This document shows, one piece after another, positions 53,801 to 56,800 of a stretch of 64,000 nt of DNA. Under the pieces are notes generated by a model, which was not told the origin of the DNA, made no database searches, and was given only the letters and a program-made list of their open reading frames with translations. The position numbers and the translations under genes are program-made. Origin of the DNA: Tubulanus polymorphus (taxonomy: Eukaryota > Animalia > Nemertea). Numbering within the stretch: the first letter of the stretch is position 1; every line of letters begins with the position of its first letter. The stretch is taken from the NCBI RefSeq assembly GCF_964204645.1, contig NC_134029.1, forward strand, positions 1,116,001 to 1,180,000. The letters are read 5' to 3'.

Positions 53801-56800
53801 ATTCAAATCAAATTGCTAATTGACACAAATATTATTCGACTGTTTTGCATCATTTGATTCGCGCGAAATTTAAGTATTTAACAATTTTATCATTTTGAAA
53901 TTAATTTTCCCCATTTATTTTATTGAATTATATTGATTTTAATAATAAACGCATGAAATGCACTGTTACTAACCCCACCCCCAAATGGATCCAGTTCCAC
54001 AGATGTCTATTTGAGTTGAAATAGATTCGTGACCAGTGTTTAAGCTGAAGAGTTTGATGGATATTAATGCGATCAATGTAGAACTGGATCGTGACTAACC
54101 CCACCATACAAACTACAGCTCTAGTCATTGTAAAATACACTAAATCTAATGAATATAATGTTGTAAGAAGCTATAAGGATTCACAATCCTATGAAGAACA
54201 ACAACATACTATAGTTCTACGTTTTGGATAGAAAACTTCAGCCCATTTTCATGGAATTAGACTAATTTGACCAAAAACCATGAAAAATTTATTGAATTGT
54301 AACATTTTAAAGCTAGAAATGTCTCTGATTCACTCTGGGAATTTTTTCTGTAATCACATGAAAAAAAAACAGGGAAAACTCAGGATTTGTAAATGGGTGG
54401 AAAGTGGCGCCACCTTGTGTGAAGATGGGCACGGAGTTTCCTGCATGAAACATCAGAGCTATTTATACCGTTGTTCTTTGGATTGTTGGTTATTGATTTT
54501 ACTACGCGGCTGAAAACTGCTGTTAATCTAATAAAATCTCGATAAAGTTTCGATATCTTTTTATGGTTTGAATATTTCATTAAATTTATTTCTTCGATCG
54601 CTGTAAAAAATGACGATAAGATATTTTTCATTTAATTTATAGCAGTTATAAACCTCCTCCTCCATCTCCTGAAAACAATCAGTATCAATATCGTTATCGG
54701 TAATTTTTGTGTCATCGTTTTTATTTTTACGATTAATTTCTCTATTTTTTCGAAATCGAAACTCGCTGCACTTAATTTTCTGAATATCTCGTTTAAAAAC
54801 GACGATTCATTTCGATTCATTCGACGTTGATTCCTTTTCGATTTAGATTCTAGATTTTGATACTTGGAATTTTTTTGATGGTTGTTGATTTTCTGAAAGT
54901 GGTTTCAGATTTCATTTCTCCGTTTTATCAGGTTTTTTTGACCTGTTTGTTTTGTTTTATTTTTCTGGACATTTTTTTTCATATTTCGAATGTTAAAAAT
55001 TGGATGATTCTCTTTTATTACACGACTAATTGTGAGTGAAATATTTCATCCATTGTTTTTACCTTCTACGATGTGCTGGTTGCTATGACAAATGCTAACG
55101 GTTGCTCATTCTCCCTCGGCAGGGATTTGAATCTGATGACATCATGACACTCTGCCATGGCACTCAACCTGGCCACACTAGCCCGAGTGCGCAGGTTAGC
55201 TGCTGAAAATGTGTGGCACCAATCAGATTGCCTGTTTTATAATCTCTATAGCAAATTTCACGGATTTATTGAGCTGATGATGAAATGTGATTTCTGATTG
55301 GCTAATTATGATATCATCTAAGTTGCGCATGTCCGTGCGTACCCATGGGCTAGACGGGCTGGGTTTAGTGCTGTAGCTGAGTCTCACCACGTCATCCAGT
55401 TCAAATCCTTTCCGGGGAGGATATATGCTGGTCGCTATGATACGTGCTAATGGTTGCTATGATATAATGAAATATATTTCAAAAAGTAAAGAGTCATGTT
55501 AATGTTCATTCATTCACGATAACTAATTATGCATGCCCCGCCCATATTCCCGCCTGTGTCCATTTGATTGGCATGTCAGTCTGCTGTATCGTCGTTGTGG
55601 TCGTCGTCGTGGTAACGGTGTTGCGTCGTCTGCTGGTCGTTTATCTCGACGAGTCGTCGTATTTTTCCAGGGACGAAGACAACGACCTCAAATCGAAACT
55701 TCGACAGAAATTTAACCGAGAGTCTGACGACTTTCTCGGCCAAACGATTATTGAAGTGCGAACTTTGAGCGGTGAAATGGATGTCTGGTATAATCTAGGT
55801 GGGTTCATATCGGCCCCCTCCACCCCCCTACCACCCCCCTCCCCCACTAACCCCTAGTTCTGTGCTTCTGTGCTGTTATGATGTTTGTTTGATGCCGTGT
55901 TTCTTGCAGGGACGAGGATGAAGATATAAAAGCCAAATTAAAGTCCAAATTAACGCGTGAATCTGATGACTTTCTCGGTCAGACTATTATTGAAGTTCGG
56001 ACGTTATCCGGTGAAATGGATGTATGGTATAATTTAGGTCAGTTTGGTATGAAGTACATATGCTACATGTATACCCTGTAACAACACACTATCAGTCATA
56101 TAGAGATACATCCAGTACTAGCTAATCACTCAGTCCGTTTAACCCTTTCCTGGTGGTGGTGTTCGATGCAATACCCTATTGAAATGCGTAGTGATCGTAG
56201 TTGTTAATAGGTGGCACTCCTGGCAAAACATGTAAACAATTTCTTCAGTAGGATGAAACAATTGTTTTCGCAAAGTTCAATCGAGACTTCCCCAAAATCT
56301 GTCCACCAGGGAGGGGTTAACCGGACAAGATTTTAGTCTAAAGAAATATCTGATTTTTAGTTGATGCTCTTTGAGTTTTGGAATTGGGTCAAGGTCATAT
56401 ATTATACTCACTCCTTCAAGATTTCAAAGATATTGAAGCTAATTTGTTAGGGTTATAGATACATGATGATTGTGAGATTGTGAACTGATGTTGTTATGGG
56501 GATTGTAAACGCAGCTATACATGTATGATTTTAGAACATAACGAATGTTTAATTGTCCGCGCACAAAACAATGATAATAATCGCTACTCTGATTACTTTA
56601 TCAGAACCTCTTAGATTTTAGTTTAGTTTTTAGATTTCATCTATTTCATCATTAACTGGTGGTAACCTTCATCCATTGTGTTAATACAGTGAAACTTGCT
56701 GCTAAAGTCGTCTGAGTCGTGACGAACGTTGAGGATTTATGCAAATAATAATTACTTATACCAAGTAAATTGAATTAGAAATGCACAAATTGGGATTAAA

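What the first reader, a model, noticed from the sequence alone, without database searches (positions are those of the whole stretch)
55671..56037. Duplicated mutually exclusive exons that swap the Ca2+/phospholipid-binding loop 3 of C2B
Seen: two 128-nt exons 111 nt apart, both phase 2 to 1, so including both frameshifts. Their 3' parts encode the identical [27 protein letters not shown] despite many synonymous differences, which indicates purifying selection on both. All amino-acid differences fall in loop 3: [15 protein letters not shown] versus [15 protein letters not shown]. Established: this loop carries C2B Ca2+-ligand aspartates and the Munc13-specific amphipathic, basic helix that contacts membrane. 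Inference: splicing switches between two Ca2+/PIP2 sensor variants. I do not know of this switch in vertebrate, fly or worm unc-13.
Basis: partly seen in the sequence, partly recalled or inferred. Interest (0 to 1): 0.82.

Follow-up and report, generated by a model that had tools for sequence, protein, structure and literature searches.

The report
Alternative exon pair in unc-13 C2B
A ribbon-worm unc-13/Munc13 gene carries two intact either/or versions of the exon for the calcium-binding loop 3 of its C2B domain; five other animal genomes keep the same pair, so both versions are very probably used, but no RNA evidence could be obtained here.

Summary
Exon A (55671-55798) and exon B (55910-56037) are each 128 nt, have AG/GT splice sites, and lie in the only unc-13 C2B locus of this 268-Mb genome. 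Their last 27 codons encode the same peptide despite 14 nucleotide differences. Including both exons, or neither, gives a premature stop.

New evidence: five unnamed animal contigs carry the same tandem pair, all 128 nt, with A upstream of B. Residues and donor sites are type-specific:
- Position 4 is N/H in A and D/E in B.
- Position 12 is Q/K/H in A and S in B.
- A donors are G|GTGGG in five of six genomes; B donors are G|GTCAGT in five of six.

One genome has only the B type, and there the donor is consensus GTAAGT. B exons are 41-42/42 identical between genomes whose synonymous sites are saturated. The pair is therefore old and both copies are under selection, which supports mutually exclusive splicing.

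Not shown: RNA junctions (my one run search returned only DNA runs), any biochemical difference between the variants, and which taxa the other contigs come from. The Ca2+-ligand aspartates and the basic and hydrophobic helix positions stay acidic, basic or hydrophobic in both variants. I found no paper describing this pair. I class it as a new member of a known kind, of moderate interest.

The parts
53372..53513 (+). Constitutive C2B exon (..[48 protein letters not shown]), which carries Ca2+-binding loop 1
   Evidence: Acceptor ttttcag|T at 53371/53372 and donor ATTT|gtaagt. Pfam C2 PF00168, E 2.5e-16. tblastn to Folsomia unc-13.
53600..53641 (+). Constitutive 42-nt exon ([14 protein letters not shown]), ending TG| of the Trp codon that either alternative exon completes
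   Evidence: Sequence with tttcag| and |gtaagt. tblastn.
55671..55798 (+). Alternative exon A, 128 nt, loop 3 variant [15 protein letters not shown], donor G|gtgggt
   Evidence: A-type counterparts with the same GTGGG donor occur in L004, L006, L007 and L011. The six A exons form one side of a branch in the exon tree.
55799..55909 (+). 111-nt intron between A and B: C-rich tract, ACTAAC at intron position 48, then a pyrimidine tract and cag
55910..56037 (+). Alternative exon B, 128 nt, loop 3 variant [15 protein letters not shown], weak donor G|gtcagt
   Evidence: B-type counterparts with a GTCAGT donor occur in L003, L004, L007, L011 and L009. PDB Munc13-1 C2B match, E 1.8e-18.
58305..58428 (+). 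Constitutive exon after the pair ([39 protein letters not shown]), the last C2B strands
   Evidence: In-script frame check. tblastn.

Best explanation
This is an old, tandemly duplicated pair of mutually exclusive exons in the single unc-13/Munc13 gene of this animal. Each mRNA must carry exactly one of the two 128-nt exons. With both, the frame shifts and stops after 6 codons; with neither, the junction reads TGA. The exon encodes Ca2+-binding loop 3 of the C2B domain, including its amphipathic helix, plus the following beta strands. Both versions keep the acidic ligand residues, the basic residues and the hydrophobic stripe of the helix. They differ consistently at position 4 (N in A, acidic in B; this is the residue after the DxD motif, rat Munc13-1 D760) and at position 12 (Q in A, S in B; rat Q768). 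The choice of exon is probably regulated, because the non-consensus donor sites are conserved by type. The likely result (inferred) is two priming-factor isoforms with slightly different Ca2+/phospholipid behaviour or helix packing. This would do by splicing what vertebrates do with Munc13 paralogues. Shown here: the anatomy, the frame logic, conservation and selection. Inferred: actual use in RNA, regulation, and any functional difference.
For: Anatomy and frame. Single locus in the genome. Gene identity: C1, C2 and MUN Pfam hits and PDB Munc13-1 hits. Selection between the copies: 14 nucleotide changes in 27 identical codons, 0 of 200,000 neutral trials keep the peptide. The same pair occurs in other genomes, always A upstream of B and always 128 nt: L003, L004, L006, L007 and L011, whose B partner I predicted from the GG-type donor of fragment P0012 and then found. 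B exons are 42/42 (L004 vs L006) and 41/42 (L003 vs L004) identical at 79-82% nucleotide identity with saturated pS. Donors: A has G|GTGGG in 5 of 6 paired genomes and B has G|GTCAGT in 5 of 6; the one genome with only a B-type exon (L012/L013) has consensus G|GTAAGT. In the exon tree no within-genome A-B sisters appear, the six A exons sit on one side of a branch (60/93 support), and the A label clusters better than all 500 shuffles. Literature: the helix in this loop inserts into membrane, and R769 (exon position 13) is needed for priming.
Against: There is no RNA evidence. The run search returned only DNA-like contigs, and all 34+ B-type fragments in the protein collections are genomic exon ORFs, none spliced. 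That absence is weak evidence, because the control search with exon A also found nothing from this species or close relatives. Tree support is modest (60/93) and B monophyly is neither shown nor rejected (AU p 0.39). Only two positions are type-specific and the changes are mild, so a functional difference may be small. The other contigs are unnamed, so the taxonomic span is known only as 80-89% protein identity to each other and to the window, against 68-79% to arthropods.
Confidence: 0.78

Rival explanations
1. Both exons are spliced in alternatively, but the two proteins are functionally equivalent. The duplication would then persist for regulatory reasons or by drift, for example different splice enhancers in different neurons, and not because loop 3 behaves differently.
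For: Only positions 4 and 12 differ consistently by type. Ligand aspartates, basic residues and hydrophobic helix positions are conserved in character in both types. Vertebrate Munc13s combine a B-like D at position 4 with an A-like Q at position 12, so mixed states work.
Against: The type-specific residues have been held apart in six genomes while synonymous sites saturated. Drift would have mixed them, or gene conversion would have homogenised them. Position 4 sits directly after the DxD Ca2+-ligand motif.
Confidence: 0.15
2. One copy (most likely B, with its weak GTCAGT donor) is a silent relic in this species and only the other is ever used.
For: No transcript evidence for either exon was obtained. 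No spliced B-type fragment was seen in any protein search. The window's B is the most derived of the B exons, at 37-38/42 to the others.
Against: B is intact, with a good acceptor and an open frame. All 27 C-terminal codons are preserved through 14 synonymous-only changes. An exon that is never translated cannot be held like this. B-type exons are the better conserved of the two types across genomes.
Confidence: 0.05
3. The pair is an assembly artefact, for example a collapsed or duplicated haplotype.
For: None found.
Against: The copies are only 73% identical in nucleotides. A contig of a sequencing run spans both. The same arrangement occurs in five other assemblies.
Confidence: 0.01

Closest known systems
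SNAP-25 exons 5a/5b in vertebrates (mutually exclusive duplicated exons in a core presynaptic protein; recalled from my own knowledge, not tested here)
   Same: Tandem duplicated exons of equal length in a release-machinery gene. The isoforms differ by a handful of residues, and exactly one copy is included.
   Different: Different gene and domain (SNARE motif/linker rather than a C2 Ca2+-binding loop) and a different lineage. For SNAP-25 the isoform switch and its physiology are shown experimentally; here nothing is shown at the RNA or protein level.
Vertebrate Munc13-1/-2/-3 paralogues
   Same: The same domain and the same loop vary. Rat Munc13-1 reads DEDDDIKSRVKQRFK where the worm has [15 protein letters not shown] or [15 protein letters not shown]. 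Other vertebrate-type fragments read ..KQRLK and ..KQKFK. The loop holds the amphipathic helix and R769.
   Different: Diversity comes from separate genes, not from alternative exons of one gene. No C2B alternative exon is described in the papers searched; the Munc13-1 splicing mentioned there is a loop inside the MUN domain.
N-terminal unc-13 isoforms (C. elegans UNC-13L/S; Drosophila Unc13A/B)
   Same: One unc-13 gene gives isoforms with different release properties (cited in PMC10657410).
   Different: Those isoforms differ in N-terminal regions through alternative promoters or exons. They share one C1-C2B-MUN core, whereas here the core C2B domain itself is switched.
Other tandem alternative-exon sets noted by this scan in the same genome (Cav2 voltage sensor, Rab11, ABCG, pyruvate kinase)
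   Same: The same genomic design (tandem homologous exons) in the same animal. Several of those notes report old origin and some report RNA support (AI notes, unchecked by me).
   Different: Different genes. They say nothing about unc-13.

Membership tests
unc-13/Munc13 (C1-C2B-MUN priming factor) | C1 domain followed by a C2 domain and a MUN domain in one gene, in that order | tested here: met
   Pfam C1_1 at 49733-49957, C2 at 53368-53514 and MUN at 61666-61902. Collinear tblastn to Folsomia unc-13 homolog B from 49733 to 63491.
unc-13/Munc13 (C1-C2B-MUN priming factor) | C2B loop 3 homologous to Munc13-1 residues 757-798, including the inserted helix | tested here: met
   Both exons align without gaps to Munc13-1 chains 6nyc, 5ue8 and 7t7c, E about 2e-18. 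A helix is predicted at exon positions 4-13 in an A-type domain, but at low confidence (pLDDT 30-43).
Mutually exclusive exon pair | Adjacent homologous exons of the same length and phase, each with acceptor and donor sites | tested here: met
   128 nt each, phase 2 to 1, AG/GT sites, 73% nucleotide identity.
Mutually exclusive exon pair | Including both or neither destroys the reading frame | tested here: met
   A+B gives a stop after 6 codons; skipping both gives TGA at the junction. Length 128 nt is kept in all six genomes.
Mutually exclusive exon pair | Both copies kept by purifying selection and present in other species | tested here: met
Mutually exclusive exon pair | Transcripts containing A only and B only, and not both | tested here: inconclusive
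   The single run search (5.3-kb, mostly intronic query) listed only DNA-like runs, and the laid contigs were unspliced. No spliced fragments from this species are in the protein collections.
Ca2+-binding C2 domain | Acidic ligand residues of loop 3 present | tested here: met
   D1, D3, D5 and D19/D20 of the exon are invariant in A, B and every orthologue. D1 and D3 align to rat D757 and D759 (numbering checked against R769 at position 13).
Ca2+-binding C2 domain | Ca2+-dependent phospholipid binding that differs between the variants | not testable with these tools
   Needs recombinant domains.

The most novel reading that the evidence does not exclude
Lophotrochozoan-type animals have kept, since before the six sampled lineages split, a splicing switch inside the Ca2+-sensing C2B domain of their only Munc13. 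The switch toggles an acidic residue next to the Ca2+-ligand DxD motif and a polar stripe of the loop-3 helix. [quoted passage not shown] This would be a natural experiment on the loop that vertebrate work probes by mutagenesis.
Probability: 0.4. Interest if true: 0.75.

Novelty: new member of a known kind. Interest (0 to 1): 0.55.

Why it matters
Munc13/unc-13 is the essential vesicle-priming factor, and its C2B domain links Ca2+ and PIP2 to release probability and short-term plasticity. Mutations in this very loop change priming in mouse neurons (R769E, PMC8648301). A conserved either/or exon for this loop would give two naturally selected variants of the sensor. They could be compared directly by liposome binding or by rescue of unc-13 nulls. 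It would also give a handle on how invertebrates with a single unc-13 gene diversify synapses. If the carriers include molluscs such as Aplysia or Octopus, which is not shown here, it would bear on classic plasticity models. The conserved weak donors (GTGGG and GTCAGT, against GTAAGT where only one exon remains) are also a clean case for studying how exon choice is regulated.

Tried and rejected
1. RNA evidence. The look-up of sequencing runs with window:53300-58600 returned three runs of one study, none recorded as RNA, and read laying showed only unspliced contigs. The query was about 90% intron, which can hide RNA runs. Other follow-ups in this scan report RNA for this genome, so data probably exist, but both tools were at their caps.

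2. Spliced B-type peptides in the protein collections: none among the listed hits. The control with exon A found nothing from this species either, so this says little.

3. Naming the other genomes. The cluster look-up named only arthropods. Searching papers for the accessions found nothing. A profile built on a full-length backbone plus exon rows failed because MAFFT stacked the fragments (A2 and A3). No region of the Folsomia protein favours lophotrochozoan hits over insects.

4. Docking-site/selector RNA pairing. Only chance-level inverted repeats were found.

5. Rbfox-type TGCATG near the exons: 9 observed against 4.5 expected, uncorrected P 0.04 after about ten motifs were tried. This is not significant.

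6. AlphaFold2 of an A-type C2B domain gave mean pLDDT 51, too poor for side-chain arguments.

7. Steps not done. Vertebrate-type fragments, which may include human, were not fetched or followed.

Full report
OBSERVATION

The sequence shows two 128-nt exons at 55671-55798 (A) and 55910-56037 (B), 111 nt apart. Each is preceded by a pyrimidine tract plus AG and followed by GT. They translate to [15 protein letters not shown] and [15 protein letters not shown], each followed by the identical [27 protein letters not shown].

The neighbouring exons are 53600-53641 ([14 protein letters not shown], ending TG|) and 58305-58428 (|AG.. EKRTDKSAV...LHE). Either A or B alone gives an open C2B reading frame. 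A+B stops after six codons.

The 27 identical codons differ at 14 nucleotides, including an AGC/TCC serine pair. None of 200,000 random placements of 14 substitutions preserved the peptide. The whole 268-Mb assembly contains only these two matches. A contig of a sequencing run spans both.

WHAT THE GENE IS

Pfam finds C1 (49733-49957), C2 (53368-53514) and MUN (61666-61902). A springtail unc-13 aligns collinearly from 49733 to 63491. Both exons match rat Munc13-1 C2B in solved structures at E about 2e-18 without gaps.

With exon position 1 equal to rat D757, position 13 is R769. That residue is described as a basic residue in a C2B Ca2+-binding loop whose mutation severely impairs priming.

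COMPARATIVE EVIDENCE (NEW)

A full-library search with exon B returned many short exon ORFs from genomic contigs. Fetching their contigs showed the same tandem pair in five other assemblies:
- L003, a TARA scaffold
- L004, L006, L007 and L011, ENA metagenome-type assemblies with long contigs

In all six genomes both exons are exactly 128 nt and A lies upstream of B. The intervening introns are 75, 111, 447, 478, 739 and 3025 nt.

Two residues separate the types everywhere. Position 4 is N (H in L003) in A and D/E in B. Position 12 is Q/K/H in A and S in B.

The donor sites are also type-specific. A has G|GTGGG in five of six genomes; the divergent L003 copy has GTCAGT. B has G|GTCAGT in five of six and GTTAGT in L006. 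I chose fragment P0012 because of its A-type 'GG' donor and predicted a B partner. L011 has one 75 nt downstream.

One genome (L012/L013) has only a B-type exon, and there the donor is consensus G|GTAAGT. Non-consensus donors kept by type, and a consensus donor where there is no choice, are what regulated alternative exons look like.

SELECTION AND AGE

Between genomes the synonymous sites are saturated. Even so, B exons are 42/42 (L004 vs L006) and 41/42 (L003 vs L004) identical in protein at about 80% nucleotide identity. An exon that is never translated could not be held this way.

In an ML tree of the 128-nt exons, no A pairs with the B of its own genome. The six A exons form one side of a branch (support 60/93), and the A label clusters better than all 500 shuffles. 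B monophyly is neither shown nor rejected (AU p 0.39). The duplication therefore predates the split of these six genomes.

Their unc-13 proteins are 80-89% identical to each other and to the window. Identity to springtail, fly and midge is 67-79%. Earlier notes of this scan call the genome the ribbon worm Tubulanus polymorphus (unchecked), so a lophotrochozoan-type clade is likely. I could not name the other contigs.

Named fly, midge, springtail, nematode and schistosome proteins carry only an A-type loop. Two distant genomes (L005, L010) have a single exon.

WHAT DIFFERS

D1, D3, D5, D19 and D20 are invariant in all copies. The basic positions 7, 9, 11, 13 and 16 stay basic in nearly all copies (L006's A has Ser at 16), and positions 6, 10 and 14 stay hydrophobic. 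The ligand set and the membrane-contact character of the helix are therefore kept in both variants.

The consistent differences (4 and 12, often also 8) are spaced i, i+4, i+8. On a helix this is one stripe, about 200 degrees from the hydrophobic stripe 6/10/14 (inference from periodicity). An AlphaFold2 model of an A-type domain puts a helix at exon positions 4-13, but with pLDDT 30-43, which is too weak to rely on.

Position 4 follows the DxD ligand motif directly, so an extra acidic side chain in B could alter Ca2+ or lipid affinity. From my own knowledge, the residue after the second loop-3 aspartate in synaptotagmin-1 C2A (R233) tunes apparent Ca2+ affinity. That is a lead, not a test. 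The switch looks like fine tuning beside the Ca2+ site rather than a change of the ligands or of the membrane-inserting face.

WHAT IS MISSING

There is no RNA evidence. My one run search used a 5.3-kb, mostly intronic query and listed three DNA-like runs of one study. Their contigs are unspliced. Other follow-ups of this scan report RNA evidence for other genes of this genome. The data probably exist, and my query choice may have hidden them; both tools were then at their caps.

All 34+ B-type fragments in the protein collections are genomic (acceptor-derived R upstream, intron downstream). None is spliced. The control with exon A found nothing from this species or near relatives either. Contigs under about 500 nt also seem absent from the collection, so this absence carries little weight.

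LITERATURE AND NOVELTY

Full-text searches for unc-13/Munc13 with mutually exclusive exons, C2B alternative splicing, or molluscan/annelid splice variants found no description of this pair. The Munc13-1 splicing mentioned there lies in the MUN domain. Whether RefSeq isoforms of named molluscs or annelids already list both exons could not be checked.

Mutually exclusive duplicated exons in presynaptic genes are a known kind, so this is a new member of that kind. It is notable for its place in the Ca2+-binding loop of the only Munc13 and for its age.

VERDICT

Mutually exclusive use is very likely (about 0.8-0.9) on evolutionary grounds. A functional difference is plausible but untested. Interest is moderate (0.55).

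Noticed in passing
window 51324-52223 (copies at about 51316-51435 and 52109-52222); L007:5812-5922 and 6296-6403: A second pair of homologous exons encodes the C1-C2B linker and the first C2B strand (..[18 protein letters not shown] vs ..[18 protein letters not shown]). It is also duplicated in L007, so this pair too is conserved. L004 showed one copy in my scan.
   Followed up: partly
L012:10108-10235 and L013:7729-7856: This genome has only a B-type exon (DEDDDLKSKIRSKFT) between the [14 protein letters not shown] and EKRTDRS exons. Its donor is consensus GTAAGT, in contrast to the GTCAGT of paired B exons.
   Followed up: partly
window 55799-55909: The A-B intron has an unusually C-rich tract (11 overlapping CCCC) followed by ACTAAC at intron position 48. 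That is about 50 nt from the A donor and 58 nt from the B acceptor. If ACTAAC is the branch site, A-to-B splicing might be sterically poor. In L011 the intron is only 75 nt, but in other genomes it is 447-3025 nt, so this cannot be the general mechanism.
   Followed up: no
window 54185-54538, 55070-55423, 58433-58600: These intronic stretches have word depth 100 to 40,000 times the flanks in the laid runs, so they are high-copy repeats. 55114-55184 and 55347-55417 form a 71-nt inverted repeat (72% complementary), which looks MITE-like.
   Followed up: no
protein P0314 (96 aa, ENA): An A-type fragment carries an 18-residue insertion inside loop 3 (..[29 protein letters not shown]..), partly repeating KLT. 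It could be a real loop expansion or a read-through artefact.
   Followed up: no
L003:1813-1940: The upstream exon of the TARA scaffold is much more diverged (DEDHDIRAKLRHRFTREYDDFLGQIVIDL.., 29-32/42 to the others) and has a B-like GTCAGT donor. Selection on that copy may be relaxed or altered in that lineage.
   Followed up: no
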